This document shows, in pieces, positions 8,801-24,585 of a stretch of 64,000 nucleotides of DNA. The stretch's first letter is position 1; each line of letters starts with the position of its first letter. This DNA comes from Trichosphaerium sp. ATCC 40318 (lineage: Eukaryota > Protista > Tubulinea). Position numbers and translations under genes: made by a program. The stretch covers positions 191,006-255,005 of the forward strand of contig JALMLS010000100.1 in NCBI GenBank assembly GCA_038496445.1, written 5' to 3'. The notes beneath the pieces were generated by a model, which searched no databases, was not told the DNA's origin, and worked only from the letters and a program-made list of their open reading frames with translations.

Positions 8801-8990
8801 CCGCAGAGGCCGCGCAACCAAGAAAGACTTGCTGTTGACTATTTTTTTTTTCTATGTGTTAATTTGGTTATTACGCCGCGTGATTGTAACGTCCTTGCTA
8901 GCTAGACTGTACAGGTTTAATTATACCTATTGTAATATTGCTGTATAGCGGTTAGAGAATAGCAATCACAATAACCACTGTATAACATAA

Positions 8991-11900
8991 ATGAGCGAAC
9001 AAAAGACCAGAAAGCGAAGGCGGAGTGTAAGTTTTTGAATTTCAAACAATAACACATTGTGACGCTTGACAGGGCGTTAGTACGAACGGTAAAGAGCCAA
9101 AGAAAAGGCGCACAACAATACCTGACGATTCTTCAAGCGATGAACTCTCTGACTCCAACGACGGCGAGTATTCAGCTAGGGTACGCATTTAAACGCCTCA
9201 AACGCATTGTAAATTACATTATCATCATTTTTAGACTTCCAAATTAAAAGACACTCATAAGACCCAACGGAGTGTCTTCCTCGCGTAATACATTAATAGT
9301 GCATCGATTTGATTGTTATTTAGCGCGCACAGTGGGCCAGCAAGCATACTTCGTCTAATGTTTATGATGCTGTAGCTGTAGACAAGATTATATACAAGAG
9401 AGGTGACTTTATATCAGTTGCAGGTGACTCTGGTAAATGGTATGGAAGGATTGATAAACTCTTTCAGAGAGGGTTAAATAAAATGATGACAATAAGATGG
9501 TTGTATCCTGAAAGTAGTATTCAACAAGTACTTAAAGTAAGATATTCACTTGCAATACTCGACATACAAGAGATAGTGCTCTTTTTTCTTGTAAGTAATG
9601 CCTTTTTTAGACTAAAGTCAAGTTCCGAGAGAGGGAGTTTGCGATCTCACAGCACCTTGATGATAATCCTGGCACGTGTTATTTTTTTCTTTTTAGCTTC
9701 AAATTCTTTGTCCCTTTTGGTTGTTTTGCATCTACTTACTTGGCTTTAGTTGCCACTATTCTTGAAAAGGTTACGGTGAAAGAATTAAAAGATATGAAAC
9801 AAGGAGACAAAGAAAATGTACTGAAGACATCCTCACGTAACTTCCAACTTGTTGTTTTGTTGATGTTTTTTCAAGGAGAATATCTTTTGGTACAAAAGGA
9901 TGCTCACCAAGGATCTCAAATTATTCGCAATGAATAATAAGGTACCTCAATTTGAAGATACAGTTATGTTTAACACTAGAACCTGACCCTCTTCAAGCTT
10001 CGACAAGATTTGATTTTAAAAAAGCCCAAACCAATAGAAATCTCTTTACTGTCGGATTCAGATAGCTTAGATTCCGATATCCAAATGGATACACCAATCA
10101 ATGAGTTAGATTCTTTGGTAATCAACTATAAATCGTTTCAAACGCAACTTTCCTTTCGCTGAATTTTGTTTCAAGGACGAAGACTCAGATGAAGAATCTG
10201 ATGAATCAAGTGTCAGTGAACCTAGGCGCCGACAACCGAAAATTAAAAAAAAAACATTAGCTGAGGAGTTCTTAGTAACACCAAAGTCACTATTTGATAC
10301 ATTGAAGAACCCTTGGCTATCTCGGAAAAAATTTTGGAGACAAAAGTTCGGCTTGCAGGTAACATCTTCAAAGAGTAACACTTTTCTTACTTTTTTATTC
10401 ACTGTTTGTGTTTAGGATGCCGGAGGTCGTTATGCTGATATGAAGACTCCGAACGTATTCATAGATTTAGATCCGCGGTTTTATAACAAAAAGAACGCAG
10501 CAGAAAAGAAGCTTGGTCACAAGATGACGAATAAAGAGTTTAAAAAGAAATACGAGAAAAAACTAAGAAATGTCTTTAGTAACATATCTTTATTTGATCC
10601 TGTACTTGCAGAAGTAATGTACAGATGGTTTGCCCCTGCAAATGGATACATATTAGGTACAATATTTCACATATTAAGTGAGAAAAAAAGCCCTTAACTT
10701 AGCTTCTCCTAATTCCAAGAAGATTTCGAGAATTTTACACTTTTCTGAGTGTTGTGGTAATCCATGCTGACTTTTTTATTAAGATCCGTTCGGAGGTGGT
10801 GTAACTCGTGGATGTGTAGCAGCTGCAATGAATCTACATGTTCGTATCTTTGTTTTCTCGTTTTCTCTTTCAACAAAGCATTAATTTCTCTTTGCTTTTG
10901 TTTCACTGACTCTGTTTTTGTAGTATGTTGGTGTTGATTTGGCACCATTTCAAGTAGCTACTAATAAAGATTATGCAAAATCAATACCTTTCAATGTACA
11001 ACCAACGTGGATACAAGGAAACTCGGAAGATATTAAAAAACTTGTTGCAAAAGAAAATAATCCCGCTGCTCCTCCAGGTAAAACATTTTTCAATATTTGC
11101 GCATTCTTGTATCCTACTGACCAACTATAGACGGGCAATACGATATGCTTTTGACATGTCCACCATACTGGGGTACGAAAATACATCAAGAGTTGAACCA
11201 ATATTGACTTACTTTTTGGTTAAGATCTTGAACGCTATTCTGACGACCCTGATGATTTAAGTAATGCCAAAGATTACTCACGGTTTTTAAAAACATATAC
11301 TTCAATATTAAAACGCTCATGTAAACTTGTAAAGTACGTTGTTGACTCGTTCTGAGGTCAAAATCATTTCTTCTTTTTTTCTTCTTTTTCTTACAGTTTT
11401 TTTGCAGGAAGAACAGGTTTATCATCATTGTTGTATCTAATTTTAGACGCTCTATAAAACGACAAGGTGTCTTAGGAGCATATTATCCTTTTGAGGCTGA
11501 TACAGTTAAGGTACATACCCTTCAAAAAAGAGGTTTTCAAAAAAACTTGCTTATTTTTATTTACAGATTATGGAATCTCTGGATATCTTGCTTTATAATC
11601 AATTCACTTTATCTCAAGTACAACGCTCTACCGAAATATCATTGATTTACGGACTCATAAATTCATAGACATTTGGTAATAAACGGCTTGGTTGTAGACG
11701 TACATATGTCGCTTCTAAAAAGATATACAGTACAACACAATCAGTGCTTGTATTCCTTAAGGGAGGTGAAACTTATCTTCCAGAAACAATACAACAAACA
11801 AGTGTAAAAGAATACGAAGGTACAAAAGAAACAACTGATACAGTTCTTTCAAAAATGTTTTTTTTTTTTTGGTTCCCAGGCTGAGTTTTTTATTAATTTT

Positions 11901-12708
11901 ATTTGGTAACACGTGTTGGATTTCATGTAGTACTGTGGCTTTTTGGCTAACACATATCATAGCTAATATTAAACGGATAATAAAAGAAATGAGAGAAGCT
12001 AAAAGAAAGGCAAAAGCCTCAGGTTCTAAAGAGATTAAATCCAGACCTAAAAGTCGCTTTACTACATTCAATGGCTATGAGAATGACGATGACGATGACG
12101 ATAGTGAAGAGGATGATGATGATGCTGGAGTTGCACAGAATATATCTTCTGAAGTAGTAAGCTCTTTTACCGATATATCTAGTAAGGATTACATTGACAA
12201 CATTCAGAGCAACGAACCAAAAAATTCACATAGTCCAAGCATGCCTGAATTACTAAAATTGCTTAAAACACCTAAAAATAAGATAACAAAGACTAAAAAG
12301 AAAGCTCCAATATCAACACCATCACAGACAGGATTTCGCAGGCATAAAGAAAAATCAAAGTCTACAGGAGACCAACAACCATCTTCTTCAAGTTCGTCAT
12401 CTTCTGAAAAAGTTATATCCCTTGATAGCACAGAAAAAGGAAGTATGCTTGAAGGCATGGATGAACCAGCTTTAAAAGGTACTGTAATGATAGCAAAGGC
12501 TGCAAAAAGTGTTGTAAAAGTAAGAGTTGATACAAAACAATCGCAAAAAGATGACGATGACTCAGATCTTGAAATGAAAGTAACAAATGATGACTATGAA
12601 ATAGACATTCCATCATCCAGTGATGATGAAATAGACATCCCATCATCATCCAGTGATGATGAAATAGACATCCCATCATCCAGTGATGAAGATGAAGATT
12701 CAAACTAG
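8991..12708 (+). CDS. BAH domain fused to phage/bacterial-type amino-group (N4-C/N6-A) DNA methyltransferase, with acidic low-complexity tail
   Basis: BAH about 9360-9940: YKRGDFISV..WYGRIDKL..IRWLYPE..REFAISQHLDDNPVATILEKVTV..IFWYKR. MTase about 10255-11765: SLFDPVLAEVMYRWFAPANGYILDPFGGGVTRGCVAAAMNLHYVGVDL...YDMLLTCPPYWDLERYSDDPDDLS...QSVLVFLKG. In frame from BAH to the stop via GT-AG introns and one GC-AG intron. One N-terminal junction near 9270-9325 is uncertain. Confidence 0.85.
12592..12690 (+). repeat. Three coding tandem repeats encoding (D)EIDIPSS(S)SD
   Basis: gaaatagacat(t/c)ccatca(tca)tccagtgatga occurs three times, 30-33 nt apart. Confidence 0.9.
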
Positions 12709-13191
12709 CAAACACAACTAGCTCTGAATTTTTTTAGTATAATACAATCACGTACAGAAACAAACACGTGCTCTCAACAAAGTGAGAAATAAAATTATTT
12801 TGAGCATCACCTTATCTGTTTTATTGCAATAGACATTGTCTGTCCCATACTACCACGGCAGCAAAACGTTGAAGTGGCAGTACTGACATGGCGTTTCACA
12901 CTGTATTGGATAGTTCAACTTTGTACTTTTAATGAGGATTAACTTCCATAGTCAATTCATAGTACGATACATCCCTTAAAAAAGAACAGTACCTAATATA
13001 AGTGGAAGGTTGCAAAACATGCTAAAAATGGCTTACGCACTGTTTCTGATGTGCACGTGTTTGCGAAGCGATAGTGTACAACAACTTGCCCGAGACCCAA
13101 CCACTTTAAGGTTACTGGTAACAACACTAATTTTACTATGTACATACAACTTTATTGTAACGGTGTTATTTTCTTTTTCTTTCTATGACAT

Positions 13192-15519: not shown

Positions 15520-16323
15520 ATGCAGTGCAAAGTATTCGATTCGCTGGACGTAAGAACGATAACAGACGTTCAGTTATTAGAAATAAGGAAAGCAGTCCCA
15601 ACATTCGGCCTTGTGTGCATTCGTGGTCAGAATTTGACGCCAACGGAGCTCATTTCTTTCACTGCAAAGTTTGGCGAAGTGATTACTCTCCCTACTAGCT
15701 TCAAGCTTAAGAATGAATGGCCAGACTACCCAACTATCACTAGAGTATCCAATATACGTCCTAACGGCGATATAATTAGAAAACATCGAGGAGCGGAGTA
15801 CTGGCACAACGACGGAGACTTCTGGCAACCTGATAAGAAGTACGTCTTTAGCTTCTTGAATTCAAAGGTGGTACCAAAGGAAGGAGGTAAAACAGCATGG
15901 GCTGACGTAAGAACTGCATACGAGCGACTTGACGCTAAGACAAAGCATGAAATTGACAAGCTGCGCATTTGGGTGTCATGCAAAAAAATTCCAGATTTCA
16001 AGGGTGCCAAGGAAGAAGACTTGCTCCCTGATGCGTACCACAATATTAAACATGTACACCCTGATACAAAGCGTACGAGTTTGTACCTTGGATGCGCAAC
16101 ATCGTCTATTGAAGGCATGGATGACGAAAAAGCCAAAATCCTGATTGGCAAGCTCTTGGATGTTGTGAAGCGCGAGGATAATGTATACATTCATCAATAC
16201 AAGGAAGGAGACTTGATGATATGGGATAACACATCAGTAATGCATAGAGGACAAGGCGGTTATGGAGATAACCCAAGATTGTTGTTTCGCTCCCAAGCTT
16301 TCATTAAACCACTCCACGAATAG
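15520..16323 (+). CDS. TauD/TfdA-family Fe(II)/2-oxoglutarate dioxygenase, intronless
   Basis: YWHNDGDF (HxD), GGKTAWAD, HPDTKRTSLY, GDLMIWDNTSVMHRG, RLLFR. Single 267-aa ORF. Confidence 0.9.
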   Translation: MQCKVFDSLDVRTITDVQLLEIRKAVPTFGLVCIRGQNLTPTELISFTAKFGEVITLPTSFKLKNEWPDYPTITRVSNIRPNGDIIRKHRGAEYWHNDGDFWQPDKKYVFSFLNSKVVPKEGGKTAWADVRTAYERLDAKTKHEIDKLRIWVSCKKIPDFKGAKEEDLLPDAYHNIKHVHPDTKRTSLYLGCATSSIEGMDDEKAKILIGKLLDVVKREDNVYIHQYKEGDLMIWDNTSVMHRGQGGYGDNPRLLFRSQAFIKPLHE

Positions 16324-21187: not shown

Positions 21188-22819
21188 ATGGATAAACAAA
21201 ACATTTCTACAAGCTTCCTATCAGCAACACCTCTTGTAATTAACTACAAACCAGTATACATCATACCATGCAACCTAAAGTGAAAAGAGTACACAAACTA
21301 CGCACATTTAACGTCATCGTTCTAATGAATTAAATAGGTAAACAAAGCAGCCGTAGCGCCCCTGGATCATATATTGGACCTTCCAAAGGAGCTTCAACGC
21401 TACACAACCGATCTTGACAGTGAAGTATACATAAAGTGGCCACTGCTATCCAAACTCGCAGCATACTGCTCTCGCTTTGATGGAGACCTCAACAAGGTCG
21501 GTAAATGGAAGAAGTTCAATATGATTGATTCATTCGACCCAGTAAAAATATGCGAAGCACACTTTCGTGCAGGAAAACGTGATGGGCAATGTAGATCATT
21601 TAGTGAAGACGGTCGGTTGATAAAAGAGGCCAACTACAATAACGGTAAACTTAACGGAGAATCCAAGGAGTGGTATGAACATGGGCTACTTAAGACGCAG
21701 TACACGTGGGTTGACGGTAAACTACATGGTGAATGCAACGAGTGGTACGAAAGTGGACTGCGCAAAGCACGATCCATGTTTGTTGATGGCGTACAAAACG
21801 GAGAATGCAAAGAGTGGCATAAAAATGCAAGATTGAAATTGGACTGCAGTTTTTCGAATGGAAAACGAGAAGGCGAATGCAAGAGTTGGTTTGCCAATGG
21901 CCGAAGGCAAGAGAAATGCAGATTCGAGGGTGGAAAAAAGTGTGGCGACTTGCAGATTTGGTATAACTCTGGTACACTGAAAGTAGAAGTTACATTCTGT
22001 CAACAAACAGGTGAATACAAAGAATGGCATGATGATGGCACGAGATTTGAGCAATATTTCTTCATAGATCACAAGAAACATGGAGAGGCAAAGCTTTGGT
22101 ATCCAAATGGCCAATTGGGCTCACACAGCATGTATTCGAACGGAGAAAAGAACGGGACGTGCCGGCAATGGTCTGACGCTGGTATATTGACGTCTGAGTG
22201 TAATTATGTCAATGGTAAAGCAGATGGAGAATATAAATCTTGGGAGGATGACGGCAAAATAGCTTTTCATTATTTTTATAAAAATGATAAATTGCACGGA
22301 GAATTCAAGCGTTACTACGATGGAAAGCTAGAAGAGCAATATACGTATAAACATGGTAAAATTGATGGGGTATCCAGGAGTTGGTATGCGAGCGGCAAAT
22401 TGGAAAAGCACCTCTTTTATGTCAACGACAAGCGTTATGGGGAGTGCAAAAAGTGGTATAGTAATGATCAATTGAAGGAGCATTGCCATTACGTCAATGA
22501 CAAATATGATGGGGAGTATAAAAAATGGTTCGAAAATGGAAAATTGGAGGATCATAGCCATTATGTCAACGGTGAGTACAACGGAGAGCGGAAAACATGG
22601 TGGGCCAATGGTCGCCTTTATGCAACAGAAAATTACACTCTTGGTAAGCGTGATGGAGAGTGGAAATCATGGACGAATCGTGGGGCAGCTACAGAGGACT
22701 TACACTACGAGAGTGGTGTTCTAAAGCGCCGGATATGCTATAAAAATGAGATCAAACACGAATACGTGTATACTCCGATTAAGGTTGTATCAGAGCTCAA
22801 TGATGGAAGGGAGGATTGA
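21188..22819 (+). CDS. MORN_2/YwqK-type repeat protein with F-box-like N-terminal motif
   Basis: Roughly 15 repeats of about 24 aa of the type G-x-x-K-x-W-Y-x-N-G-x-L...Y-x-N-G-K. ILDLPKELQRY...PLLSK is F-box-like. Probable short first exon from ATG 21188, then one exon of about 1.5 kb. Confidence 0.8.
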
Positions 22820-23087: not shown

Positions 23088-24585
23088 TTAGAGGTAAGGT
23101 ATACCTTCGTACTGTCCCAAAGAGTATTCTATAAAATAGTCTAAATAATCTACACGACGAGCACCAGATCGTGTAAGACGATTATCAGTATTTTCACAGA
23201 ATCTTGTACTGTGTCTAGACTTTTCAACCGCGTAAAGGCCTTTCAGTGATAGAAAAGCTTCATCTGAGATTTGATCACAGTTTTTAAGACCAATTGTATG
23301 AACACCTGATAGCGCTCTTACTCCTTCATCTGTAACTTCAGTACCATCAAGATTAATTGAATACACTCCCTTCAATGCTTTAATACCTTCATCTGTTACT
23401 GTAGTACGAGCAAGGTCAATGGAATGAACGCCCTTCAGTGCTTTGATTCCTTCATCTGTAACTAAAGTGTCTCCAAGATGAATACTATGAACACCTGCAA
23501 GCGCTTTTACACCTTCATCTGTGACTGATGTTGTGTTAAGGAAAACAGTATGAGCACCCTTCAATGATTTGATACCTTCATCTGTTACTGCAGTACCTTC
23601 AAGATAAATGGTGTGTACACCTGCAAGTTGTTTGATACCTTCGTCAGTTACTGCACTGTCAGTGAGGTTGATAGTATGGACACCCTTTAGTGACTTGATG
23701 CCTTCATCAGTCACATTTTTACAGTTTAATATATCAATGGTATGAACTCCAGCAAGTGCTTTGATTCCGTCGTCTGTCACCAATGTGGAAGTAAGATCAA
23801 TTGTATGAACACCTTTCAGTGCCTTGATACCCTCATCTGTAATTGTTCTACAACGATATAGACAAATAGAATGTACTCCTGCAAATGCCTTAAGATCATT
23901 ATCATTGATAACTCCATCTTTCTCATATCTTACCTGGAAGTTTCTTTTGAATGAAGTATCAATGTGTTTACATCCAGATAACAATGAACACAAAGTATTG
24001 TTTTCAACATTCATCACTATGACACTGTTGTTCATGACACCCTTGTACTGTCTGACTTTTAAGATATCTGGAATGTCGTAAATATGCACTGTTTCATATC
24101 CAACGACATGATGGATGATATCAGCCATCAAACGACATGACTGAGCAACAGCAAACCTTGCTTTCGCCTCTGTATGATGAAGAATCGTGGATATAACTTC
24201 TGGTGGGAAATTAAGAATGTTCACTACTTTATGTGGACGAGTTTGTGTTCTTTTAAATTGTACAATGTTAGTATCTTGAATATTTCAGTATCAGAACGTA
24301 CATTCTTACTTGCTTGTGCTTTGGTAGCGACAAGTCTTCGGATTGCGTCACAGGTATAACTGTTGGTACTGGTACTGTGTGCTTTTCGGGTGTAGAAGTC
24401 TCCGTGGTTTTAAAGAGATATTGGTCGATTTGGTGTAAAAGGTTCTTGTTTGCAACGTTTAAGATATTTTCAAGCTGGTTTATAAACACTTTACGTTGTT
24501 TTGTGCTTATTTTACTAAACTCTTCTTTGTGGTTGTTGTGATAGTATGTGATTGCTTGCTCCACTGAAACGCCTGGTAAATTCAT
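23088..24585 (-). CDS. F-box plus leucine-rich-repeat protein
   Basis: F-box ILNFPPEVISTILHHT..AVAQSCRLM; about 10 repeats of 21-22 aa (VTDEGIKALKGVHTIDL). An N-terminal exon (ATG 24585) joins in frame through intron 24250-24301. Confidence 0.85.

What the first reader, a model, noticed from the sequence alone, without database searches (positions are those of the whole stretch)
8991..12708. BAH chromatin reader fused to a phage-type N4-C/N6-A DNA methyltransferase: candidate domesticated epigenetic system
Seen: one spliced reading frame joins a BAH domain (about 9360-9940) to an amino-MTase with motif I DPFGGG (10783-10800) ahead of motif IV TCPPY (11154-11168). The flanking blocks LAEEFLVTPKSLFD..W..RKKFW, FYNKKNAAEKKLG..T.KEF, SLFDPVLAEVMYRWF, DLERYSDDPDDLS and QSVLVFLKG resemble, from memory, the phage/prophage (often ParB-associated) methyltransferase family. 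Eight introns fall inside the MTase domain and the neighbours are LUC7 and Ada3, so it is nuclear and long integrated rather than contamination. Established: BAH domains bind nucleosomes or methylated histones (DNMT1, CMT3, Orc1/Sir3); (S/D/N)PPY marks amino-MTases, not C5 MTases; a bacterial N4-C MTase fused to a chromodomain marks silent chromatin in bdelloid rotifers. Inference: an independent, BAH-guided 4mC or 6mA writer in an amoeboid protist. Surveys have noted related prokaryote-derived MTases with chromatin domains in eukaryotes, so novelty of this exact fusion needs checking.
Basis: partly seen in the sequence, partly recalled or inferred. Interest (0 to 1): 0.93.

Follow-up and report, generated by a model that had tools for sequence, protein, structure and literature searches.

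The report
BAH reader fused to phage methyltransferase
An amoeba-like protist has a 17-exon nuclear gene that joins a histone-reading BAH domain to a DNA-methyltransferase domain taken from bacteriophages, so it may write a bacterial-type DNA mark onto chromatin, but activity and expression are unproven.

Summary
A 17-exon, all GT-AG gene (8991-12708, +; 837 aa) lies between LUC7 and Ada3.

**BAH domain (aa ~62-186).** It is homologous (E 3e-17) to a Pfam-verified BAH domain. It keeps the residues that plant SHL uses to read H3K27me3.

**Methyltransferase domain (aa ~253-590).** It belongs to the phage family found next to ParB and terminase genes (phrog_12517/498). It is 30-39% identical to phage proteins and keeps 66 of 83 near-invariant family positions. 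Motif I (DPFGGGVTRG) and motif IV (CPPY) are intact.

**Relatives.** The only other BAH fusion found is an environmental eukaryotic protein (P0062/P0283), 35% identical over both domains. The two are sisters (99/97) inside the phage/bacterial radiation. BAH sits where phage proteins carry ParB.

**Unproven.**
- The Cys in CPPY is outside the canonical motif, and I found no study of this family's base specificity.
- The best fold matches are tRNA m2G methyltransferases, although sequence profiles point to DNA methylases (PF01555) in swapped motif order.
- A probable match in the Trichosphaerium genome paper (TRSP19856, 16 introns) is listed as a bacterial transfer not detected in the transcriptome.

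**Verdict.** This is a new variant of the "histone-read, DNA-write" kind. The scan's first stage flagged this same stretch once before.

The parts
8991..9026 (+). Exon 1 (aa 1-12), start codon and basic cluster KRRR (NLS-like, inferred)
   Evidence: ATG at 8991, donor GTAAGT at 9027
9073..9180 (+). Exon 2 (aa 13-48), second basic cluster KKRR and an acidic/Ser stretch
   Evidence: Open frame, acceptor AG at 9071-72, donor GTACGC. N-terminal model least certain.
9324..9536 (+). Exon 3 (aa 49-119): first half of the BAH domain, with cage residues W87, W107, Y109
   Evidence: Aligns to the BAH domain of P0062. Top PDB hits are BAH 7xpk/7xpj, E 0.12. Cage positions mapped onto SHL Tyr41/Trp63/Tyr65 through and PMC6013494.
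9611..9677 (+). Exon 4 (aa 120-141): BAH, with H134 and D136 (SHL His88/Asp90 positions)
   Evidence: The donor GTTATT is weak and intron 4 (72 nt) is stop-free in frame, so its removal is inferred from the P0062 alignment.
9750..9817 (+). Exon 5 (aa 142-164): BAH
9876..9941 (+). Exon 6 (aa 165-186): end of BAH
9998..10117 (+). Exon 7 (aa 187-226): Ser/Asp-rich linker
   Evidence: No homology outside the gene.
10176..10358 (+). Exon 8 (aa 227-287): acidic linker, basic cluster, then the start of phage-family homology (from aa 253; conserved W273, R276, K277, W280, G285)
   Evidence: Aligns to the region that follows ParB in phage proteins. Conserved positions.
10416..10656 (+). Exon 9 (aa 288-367): N-terminal helical module and the FDPVL..E..Y.WF block that precedes motif I
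   Evidence: tblastn to phage methylases. phmmer gives 210 hits at E<=1e-3 among 1.84 billion representatives. phrog_12517 E 4.5e-12.
10784..10839 (+). Exon 10 (aa 368-386): motif I DPFGGGVTRG (AdoMet-binding loop), at 10784-10812 plus G10656
   Evidence: D368, P369, F370, G372, G373, R376 and G377 match family positions that are >=98% conserved
10924..11077 (+). Exon 11 (aa 387-437): strands 2-3 region (Y387, G389, Q396, N400, W415, G418 conserved)
   Evidence: phrog_12517 E 2e-4, profile positions 130-177
11131..11172 (+). Exon 12 (aa 438-451): catalytic motif IV, CPPY at 11157-11168
   Evidence: D439, C444, P445, P446 and Y447 are invariant in the family
11225..11333 (+). Exon 13 (aa 452-488): DLE.YSDDPDDLS block after motif IV
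   Evidence: phrog_12517 E 2.3e-6 and phrog_498 E 5e-5
11408..11510 (+). Exon 14 (aa 488-522): methyltransferase core strands (R488, F489, V493, V494, R498, T513 conserved; G521D is a change)
11567..11617 (+). Exon 15 (aa 523-539): methyltransferase core (Y525, N526 conserved)
11669..11819 (+). Exon 16 (aa 540-589): last strands of the methyltransferase (QSVLVFLKG). The family-invariant His is Thr here (T555).
11963..12708 (+). Exon 17 (aa 590-837 plus stop): Ser/Asp/Lys/Glu-rich low-complexity tail with no relatives found
12596..12689 (+). Three tandem ~30-nt repeats that encode (D)DEIDIPSSS at the C-terminus
   Evidence: Tandem Repeats Finder: period 30, 3.0 copies, 89% matches

Best explanation
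The gene encodes a nuclear, chromatin-directed methyltransferase built from two parts.

The catalytic part was captured by an ancestor of this amoeba-like protist from the phage/prophage methyltransferase family that sits beside ParB and the terminase genes. In phages this enzyme is thought to modify phage DNA around packaging. After capture, the ParB targeting module at the N-terminus was replaced by a eukaryotic BAH domain, and the gene acquired 16 introns and host codon usage.

The proposed mechanism has three steps.
1. The BAH domain has an SHL/EBS-type aromatic cage (W87, W107, Y109) and the His/Asp pair (H134, D136). It docks on a methyl-lysine histone tail, probably of the ARKS type such as H3K27me3 or H3K9me.
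2. This brings the AdoMet-dependent domain (motif I DPFGGGVTRG, motif IV CPPY) to nucleosomal DNA.
3. The enzyme methylates an exocyclic amino group of a flipped base. N6 of adenine is most likely and N4 of cytosine is possible.

Shown: the gene structure, both domain homologies, intact motifs, phage ancestry, and a second eukaryote with the same fusion. Inferred: nuclear location, the histone mark read, DNA as substrate, the base, and that the enzyme is active and expressed.
For: **Gene model.** 17 exons, all GT-AG, no stops. It lies between LUC7 and Ada3. GC3 is 0.27-0.29, like the neighbours.

**BAH domain.**
- E 3e-17 and z 23.9 to the BAH domain of P0062, which scores 68 bits on PF01426.
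- P0062 BAH matches SHL, EBS, BAHCC1 and polybromo structures.
- All five SHL H3K27me3-contact positions are aromatic or conserved in both proteins.

**Methyltransferase domain.**
- 30-39% identical to phage proteins over 245-396 aa.
- Exons hit phrog_12517 in colinear order.
- 66 of 83 positions that are >=90% conserved are kept, including all of motifs I and IV.

**DNA as the likely substrate.**
- 95 of the 96 full-length family members scanned match PF01555.
- A family profile hits DNA methylases TTHA0409 (E 2e-14), CcrM, an N4C methyltransferase, MboIIA and DpnA.
- NCBIfam partial hits are all adenine-specific DNA methyltransferases.
- Bacterial members sit in prophages directly upstream of the small and large terminase and portal genes, often fused to ParB_N.

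**Long-term retention.** The window protein and P0062 are sisters (UFBoot 99 / SH-aLRT 97). They share three identical substitutions at family positions that are >=93% conserved. They are only 35% identical yet keep both domains.

**Precedent.** Bdelloid N4CMT joins a chromodomain to a PF01555 enzyme (PMC8885841).
Against: - No activity, methylome or expression data exist.
- The window protein has the longest branch in the tree (1.7 against a median of 0.51).
- It has lost the family-invariant His (T555) and a 99%-conserved Gly (D521).
- Cys in CPPY is outside the canonical [DNSH]PP[YFW] motif, so the base cannot be read from the motif.
- The top fold matches are tRNA m2G methyltransferases.
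- The spliced window protein could not be submitted to Pfam or folded, so its domain calls rest on exon pieces and on alignment to P0062.
Confidence: 0.5

Rival explanations
1. The gene is a silent or catalytically impaired relic of an old transfer. It is intact as an ORF but little or never expressed, or it is kept for a non-catalytic role such as a BAH-containing chromatin-binding protein with a dead methyltransferase fold.
For: - The probable published model TRSP19856.t1 is scored '-' for detection in the transcriptome.
- The window protein has the longest branch in the tree.
- It has lost the invariant His (T555), G521 and 15 other highly conserved positions.
- It was not found among transcriptome-derived proteins in the large protein search.
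Against: - Seventeen exons stay open across 2.5 kb of coding sequence, with 16 canonical introns.
- Every residue of motifs I and IV and the FDPVL..E..Y.WF block is kept.
- The BAH cage residues are kept.
- A partner 35% identical in another eukaryote retains the same architecture, which implies long purifying selection.
- Absence from a limited transcriptome could reflect stage-specific expression.
Confidence: 0.25
2. The enzyme is active but its substrate is not DNA. It could methylate RNA (for example N2 of guanine) or a protein amide or amine on chromatin (for example a histone), with BAH only providing chromatin tethering.
For: - The best structural matches of the homologue's model are tRNA m2G methyltransferases: TrmN Z 18.3, aTrm11 18.1, Trm14 17.9, Trm11 17.4. 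The next match is 16.0.
- Weak Pfam hits to RsmD-type (14 members) and cap guanine-N2 (6 members) families.
- The wider [DNSH]PP[YFW] superfamily includes RNA m2G and protein glutamine methyltransferases (PMC4738411).
- The Cys of CPPY is unlike any characterised DNA enzyme that I could find.
Against: - Sequence profiles match DNA methylases of PF01555 most consistently: 95 of the 96 full-length members scanned, none to PF01170 (PDB hits).
- Sequential structure aligners cannot rank the circularly permuted beta-class DNA methylases properly, so the ranking is biased.
- The phage context is ParB fusion, a position next to terminase and portal genes, and C5 DNA methylase neighbours. This points to DNA.
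- No THUMP or other RNA-binding domain is present.
Confidence: 0.12
3. The fusion is an artefact: bacterial or phage contamination, a mis-assembly, or two adjacent genes wrongly joined by my model.
For: - I built the model by hand.
- One donor (GTTATT, intron 4) is weak.
- The spliced protein was not found in the protein databases searched.
Against: - Nine spliceosomal-type introns interrupt the phage-derived part itself, and none of the phage homologues has them.
- The gap between the last BAH exon and the linker exons is 56-58 nt.
- The flanking genes are eukaryotic.
- Composition matches the neighbours.
- An independent eukaryotic contig encodes BAH plus methyltransferase in one 617-aa ORF with a Kozak-like start.
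- A published gene model with the same intron count (16) exists.
Confidence: 0.03

Closest known systems
Bdelloid rotifer N4CMT (PMC8885841)
   Same: It is a horizontally acquired prokaryotic amino-methyltransferase of the PF01555 kind, fused to a eukaryotic methyl-lysine reader and carrying introns. Its authors describe it as a 'histone-read-DNA-write' enzyme. Its bdelloid lineage also clusters with phage methyltransferases.
   Different: N4CMT is the permuted beta type (catalytic motif before the AdoMet motif), with SPPY and a C-terminal chromodomain. Its 4mC activity is proven.
Phage/prophage ParB-terminase-locus methyltransferases (phrog_12517 / phrog_498). Examples: Mycobacterium prophiT37-1 gp72, Microcystis phage Mae-JY30 XAI96326, Listeria phage B054 gp77, Enterococcus phiFL3A gp36.
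   Same: The catalytic domain is the same from the W..RK..W helix to the ..VLVF.KG strand. Identity is 30-39%. Motif order I then IV is shared, and the invariant CPPY and DPFxGGxxRG motifs are kept.
   Different: The phage proteins carry ParB_N (24 of 96 sampled) or nothing at the N-terminus. They lie next to terminase genes and have no introns. Here ParB is replaced by BAH, and a long acidic tail is added.
Iyer, Zhang and Aravind 2016, Group-1 Clade 6 eukaryotic N6A-methyltransferases (haptophytes such as Emiliania; PMC4738411)
   Same: They are described as unpermuted enzymes derived from methyltransferases of the phage ParB-terminase large subunit locus. That is the same prokaryotic source context as here.
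   Different: They are reported only in haptophytes and fused to an FHA-fold domain. That paper makes no mention of BAH. I could not obtain those sequences, so whether they are the same family or the same transfer is untested.
SHL / EBS / BAHD1-type BAH readers of H3K27me3 (PMC6013494)
   Same: SHL is the best PDB sequence match of the partner's BAH domain (5znp, E 2e-11). The aromatic cage and the His-x-Asp pair are conserved.
   Different: Those readers are BAH-PHD or BAH-only proteins without an enzyme. The histone specificity here is only inferred from five aligned residues.
DNMT1 / CMT / DIM2 (BAH plus C5 DNA methyltransferase)
   Same: A BAH domain is coupled to a DNA methyltransferase in one polypeptide (PMC12344493).
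   Different: Those catalytic domains are C5-cytosine methyltransferases of ancestral eukaryotic origin and are unrelated to the amino-methyltransferase here.

Membership tests
Phage ParB-terminase-locus methyltransferase family (phrog_12517/498) | Significant, colinear sequence match to the family profile | tested here: met
   Window exons 9, 11 and 13 hit phrog_12517 at profile positions 41-110, 130-177 and 191-222 (E 4.5e-12, 2e-4, 2.3e-6). The spliced domain scores E 2e-47 to a phage member.
Phage ParB-terminase-locus methyltransferase family (phrog_12517/498) | Family-invariant residues: DPFxGGxxRG, D..CPPY.DLE.Y, FDPVL.E..Y.WF, KTHQN | tested here: inconclusive
   66 of 83 positions that are >=90% conserved are kept, including all of motifs I and IV. 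The invariant His of KTHQN is Thr (T555), and G521 is Asp.
Phage ParB-terminase-locus methyltransferase family (phrog_12517/498) | Phage or prophage context beside terminase genes, often with a ParB_N fusion | tested here: not met
   Shown for bacterial and phage members. The window gene has BAH instead of ParB and lies between LUC7 and Ada3. It is a derived eukaryotic offshoot, not a phage gene.
PF01555 N6_N4_Mtase (DNA N6-adenine / N4-cytosine methyltransferases) | Pfam profile match above the gathering score | tested here: inconclusive
   The spliced window protein could not be submitted, and single exons give no hit. Its partner P0062 scores 29.2-32.7 bits against a cut-off of 26.7. Of the 96 full-length family members scanned, 95 match.
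PF01555 N6_N4_Mtase (DNA N6-adenine / N4-cytosine methyltransferases) | Motif order of the beta class (catalytic motif IV before AdoMet motif I) | tested here: not met
   Motif I (aa 368-377) precedes motif IV (aa 444-447). The family profile matches TTHA0409 (2zie) in two pieces in swapped order.
PF01555 N6_N4_Mtase (DNA N6-adenine / N4-cytosine methyltransferases) | Catalytic motif [DNS]PP[YF] | tested here: not met
   The motif is CPPY, and the Cys is 100% invariant in the family. The definition [DNSH]PP[YFW] is from PMC4738411.
PF01555 N6_N4_Mtase (DNA N6-adenine / N4-cytosine methyltransferases) | Methylates DNA adenine N6 or cytosine N4 | not testable with these tools
   I found no biochemical data for any member of this subfamily.
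BAH domain (PF01426) | Profile or sequence match to BAH | tested here: met
   The match is indirect. Window aa 62-186 aligns to P0062 BAH (PF01426, 68 bits) at E 3e-17, z 23.9. Exon 3 alone has BAH 7xpk/7xpj as top PDB hits, E 0.12. Single exons get no Pfam hit. The AF2 model of the BAH part failed (pLDDT 44).
Methyl-lysine-reading BAH (SHL/EBS type) | Aromatic cage (SHL Tyr41, Trp63, Tyr65) and the His88/Asp90 pair | tested here: met
   By alignment only: W87, W107, Y109, H134, D136 in the window, and W/W/Y/H/D in P0062. Binding is untested.
'Histone-read, DNA-write' acquired amino-methyltransferases (N4CMT-like) | Prokaryote-derived amino-methyltransferase fused to a chromatin reader in a spliced nuclear gene | tested here: met
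'Histone-read, DNA-write' acquired amino-methyltransferases (N4CMT-like) | The corresponding base modification is present in the genome and depends on the enzyme | not testable with these tools
   No methylome data are available here.
tRNA m2G methyltransferases (Trm11/TrmN/Trm14, PF01170) | THUMP domain and a PF01170 profile match | tested here: not met
   None of the 102 sequences scanned hit PF01170 or THUMP. The similarity is at fold level only (Z 17.4-18.3).

The most novel reading that the evidence does not exclude
The CPPY enzymes could be a distinct catalytic class whose product or target is not the usual 6mA or 4mC at short motifs. In that case this protist would use a BAH-guided member to write a new kind of chromatin-linked DNA mark. 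One concrete version links it to the genome's unexplained excess of the palindrome CACGTG. That palindrome occurs 38 times in this window against 9.7 expected, and three copies lie in or beside this gene. Nothing here tests that link.
Probability: 0.07. Interest if true: 0.9.

Novelty: new variant of a known kind. Interest (0 to 1): 0.62.

Why it matters
Eukaryotes have only a few proven cases in which a bacterial-type DNA methyltransferase was captured and wired to chromatin. Examples are 4mC in bdelloid rotifers and in Marchantia.

This gene would be an independent case in an amoeba-like protist, with a different reader (BAH) and a different source. The source is a phage packaging-locus methyltransferase whose own chemistry has not been described in the papers I could search.

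It gives three direct experiments:
- Does this protist carry 6mA or 4mC?
- What does a CPPY enzyme methylate?
- Which histone mark does this BAH domain read?

Swapping ParB for BAH at the same position is also a clear example of how a targeting module can be exchanged when a gene crosses domains of life.

Tried and rejected
1. **Pfam on single exons.** No meaningful hits, because the pieces are too short. I switched to homologues and to PHROGs on exons.
2. **Finding the window's own protein or an orthologue.** The representative search with exon 9 gave only relatives at <=53% identity over that exon. The word-indexed search with P0062 listed no other BAH fusion among its top 120 hits.
3. **BAH-only search with P0062 residues 1-145.** It found only itself.
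4. **Metagenome and viral scans for more fusions.** These found nothing, or only a BAH-PHD protein, L006.
5. **Organism identification through the neighbouring TauD ORF.** This failed because the ORF is itself bacterial-like. The identity as Trichosphaerium rests on earlier scan notes plus matching GC (37.9% against 37.69%), mean intron size (75.25 against 75.4 nt) and the 16-intron table entry. It is probable, not proven.
6. **AF2 model of the BAH domain from a 3-row alignment.** pLDDT was 44, which is unusable.
7. **Possible retained intron in L010.** Contig L010 splits the P0283 gene into two ORFs, but the cause is a 1-nt indel.
8. **Lead that M.EcoGIX/M.BceJIII (PMC7736820) belong to this family.** The paper text gave no support, and I did not pursue it.
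9. **Contamination and two-gene readings.** Both rejected; see the rival explanations.


Full report
**Gene structure**

Three-frame translation of 8980-12720 and the raw sequence allow one reading frame to be spliced through 17 exons, from the ATG at 8991 to the TAG at 12706-12708. All 16 introns begin with GT (14 with GTA) and end with AG. They are 46-143 nt long (median 58, mean 75). The product is 837 aa with no internal stop.

The weakest points of the model are:
- the N-terminal two exons;
- intron 4, whose donor GTTATT is weak and whose 72 nt are stop-free in frame. Its removal is supported by the alignment to the partner protein.

The gene lies between two ordinary eukaryotic genes on the other strand. 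LUC7 (PF03194; 7136-8821) starts about 170 nt upstream of the ATG. Ada3 (PF10198; 13195-13452) lies downstream. The coding sequence has GC 0.37 and GC3 0.29. The methyltransferase part has GC3 0.27, like LUC7 (0.27) and Ada3 (0.19-0.28). This is a resident nuclear gene, not contamination.

**The methyltransferase part**

Exon 9 alone finds phage 'DNA modification methylase' and 'ParB-like nuclease domain' proteins by tblastn. It also finds 210 proteins at E <= 1e-3 among 1.84 billion representatives.

The spliced domain (aa ~253-590) aligns:
- over 245 aa at 39% identity (E 2e-47) with Microcystis phage Mae-JY30 XAI96326;
- over 396 aa at 30% identity (E 6e-44) with Mycobacterium prophage prophiT37-1 gp72, a ParB_N plus methylase protein two genes upstream of the terminase.

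Window exons 9, 11 and 13 hit phrog_12517 in colinear order. The partner protein hits phrog_12517 (E 3e-86) and phrog_498 'DNA methyltransferase' (E 2e-62).

In two bacterial chromosomes, family members sit in prophages directly upstream of the small and large terminase and portal genes. This is the 'ParB-terminase large subunit locus' of Iyer, Zhang and Aravind (PMC4738411). Only 27 of 50,697 phage records carry the family, including an archaeal virus.

**Conservation**

I compared the window protein with 94 prokaryotic and phage members. It keeps 66 of the 83 positions that are at least 90% conserved. These include every residue of motif I (DPFxGGxxRG), motif IV with its surroundings (D...CPPY.DLE.Y), and the FDPVL.E..Y.WF block.

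It has lost the invariant His of KTHQN (Thr 555) and a 99%-conserved Gly (Asp 521). Its branch is the longest in the tree.

**What kind of methyltransferase**

By sequence the family belongs with PF01555 DNA amino-methyltransferases:
- 95 of the 96 full-length members scanned match PF01555, and none matches PF01170.
- A family profile finds TTHA0409 (2zie, E 2e-14). More weakly it finds CcrM, a DNA N4-cytosine methyltransferase (8s9n), MboIIA, DpnA and PvuII.
- NCBIfam gives only partial hits, all to adenine-specific DNA methyltransferases.

The match to 2zie comes in two pieces in swapped order. This family is therefore circularly permuted relative to the classical beta class, with motif I before motif IV.

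An AlphaFold2 model of the partner's catalytic half (pLDDT 86) gives different top matches. They are tRNA m2G methyltransferases: TrmN (Z 18.3), aTrm11 (18.1), Trm14 (17.9) and Trm11 (17.4). The next match scores 16.0. These are unpermuted members of the same amino-methyltransferase superfamily. Sequential aligners cannot rank permuted DNA methylases fairly, so I read this as a caution rather than a refutation.

The catalytic motif is CPPY, with Cys invariant across the family. This lies outside the [DNSH]PP[YFW] definition. I found no paper linking CPPY to a methyltransferase and no study of any member's specificity. The base therefore cannot be called from sequence.

**The BAH part and the second eukaryote**

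Among the 150 best hits, one (P0062, 535 aa) aligns with the window protein from aa 62 to 589. Identity is 35% and E is 1e-96. It carries a Pfam BAH domain (PF01426, 68 bits, E 9e-19) ahead of N6_N4_Mtase.

Its full-length form is P0283: 617 aa, with an acidic and basic N-terminus and a Kozak-like GCCACCATG start. It is one uninterrupted ORF on a contig seen in three JGI samples. Its organism is unknown.

The BAH regions alone align at 60 bits, E 3e-17, z 23.9 against shuffles. P0062's BAH domain matches solved BAH structures: SHL (5znp) at 2e-11, then polybromo, RSC2, EBS and BAHCC1.

I mapped the SHL H3K27me3 contacts (Tyr41, Trp63, Tyr65, His88, Asp90; PMC6013494) through these alignments. 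The equivalents are W87, W107, Y109, H134 and D136 in the window protein, and W/W/Y/H/D in P0062. This suggests a methyl-lysine reader of the ARKS type. That is inference from five residues.

An AlphaFold model of the BAH part failed (pLDDT 44).

**Phylogeny and origin**

In a 171-row FastTree, and in a 55-row IQ-TREE run (LG+C20 PMSF), the window protein and P0062 are sisters. Support is 98 in the first tree and UFBoot 99 / SH-aLRT 97 in the second. The pair sits inside the phage/bacterial radiation. Both branches are long, so long-branch attraction is a concern.

Two further observations support a single capture and fusion before the two lineages split:
- Both proteins share three identical substitutions at family positions that are at least 93% conserved (S to D, V to T, R to G).
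- Both have the same BAH-linker-methyltransferase layout.

In both proteins, BAH occupies the N-terminal place that ParB_N holds in 24 of the 96 sampled family members. One targeting module was exchanged for another.

**Literature and novelty**

Iyer et al. report eukaryotic descendants of ParB-terminase-locus methyltransferases only in haptophytes, fused to FHA. The word BAH does not occur in that paper. I could not fetch those sequences to test whether they are the same family.

A 2025 survey found no PF01555 proteins in Acanthamoeba, Cyanophora or Naegleria (PMC12344493). Searches combining BAH with these methyltransferases returned nothing relevant.

Earlier notes of this scan suggested that the genome is the marine amoeba Trichosphaerium. 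The published draft genome fits: GC 37.69% against 37.9% here, and mean intron 75.4 nt against 75.25 nt here.

That paper's table of putative bacterial transfers lists TRSP19856.t1 as follows:
- Alien Index: 101;
- introns: 16;
- putative donor: Selenomonadaceae;
- detection in transcriptome: '-'.

The intron count and the annotation style make it probable that this is the same gene. If so, it has been catalogued as a transfer. Its BAH fusion and methyltransferase nature were not described, and its expression was not detected.

**Verdict**

The closest functional analogue is bdelloid N4CMT (PMC8885841). This gene differs from it in reader domain, motif order, catalytic motif and source family. 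I rate it a new variant of a known kind.

Noticed in passing
window 15520-16323 (+): An intronless 267-aa TauD/TfdA 2OG-Fe(II) dioxygenase ORF (Pfam E 1e-39). Its best relatives are bacterial at <=50% identity. Its GC3 is 0.455, against 0.19-0.29 for neighbouring genes. It is probably a younger bacterial transfer, 2.8 kb from the BAH-methyltransferase gene.
   Followed up: partly
window, whole; copies at 9673-9678, 11910-11915, 12765-12770 in or beside this gene: CACGTG occurs 38 times against 9.65 expected (sd 3.2; none of 100 shuffles reached 38). This agrees with earlier scan notes of a genome-wide excess. Any link to this methyltransferase is speculation.
   Followed up: partly
L001 2167-4587 (Erythrobacter phage vB_EliS_R6L gp1); also P0204, P0236, P0196: Some phage members of the same family have a PLP-dependent enzyme (PALP) domain inserted between motif I and motif IV, or carry an Asp/Arg-hydroxylase-type domain (PF05118). 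This hints that the family may take part in more complex DNA modification.
   Followed up: no
window 8822-8990: Only about 170 nt separate the start of LUC7 (minus strand) from the ATG of the BAH-methyltransferase gene. The two probably share a divergent promoter.
   Followed up: no
window 12596-12689: Three tandem ~30-nt repeats encode (D)DEIDIPSSS at the C-terminus, inside a 242-aa Ser/Asp/Lys/Glu-rich tail (aa 596-837) that has no relatives found.
   Followed up: no
PMC10521059 Table S3 (not in window): A second entry, TRSP9936.t1 ('methylase', donor Anaerolineae bacterium, 8 introns, not detected in the transcriptome), could be a paralogue or a partial model of the same family. One family member (P0209) is named 'DNA modification methylase [Anaerolineae bacterium]'.
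   Followed up: no
L006 110-922: A metagenome contig encodes a BAH-PHD protein (SHL/EBS-like). It is the only hit of the BAH-pattern scan and is not a methyltransferase fusion.
   Followed up: yes
window 21374-22819 (+) and 23088-24224 (-): Long single-exon ORFs encode MORN repeats (PF07661, E 5e-42) and leucine-rich repeats. Both are unrelated to the finding.
   Followed up: no
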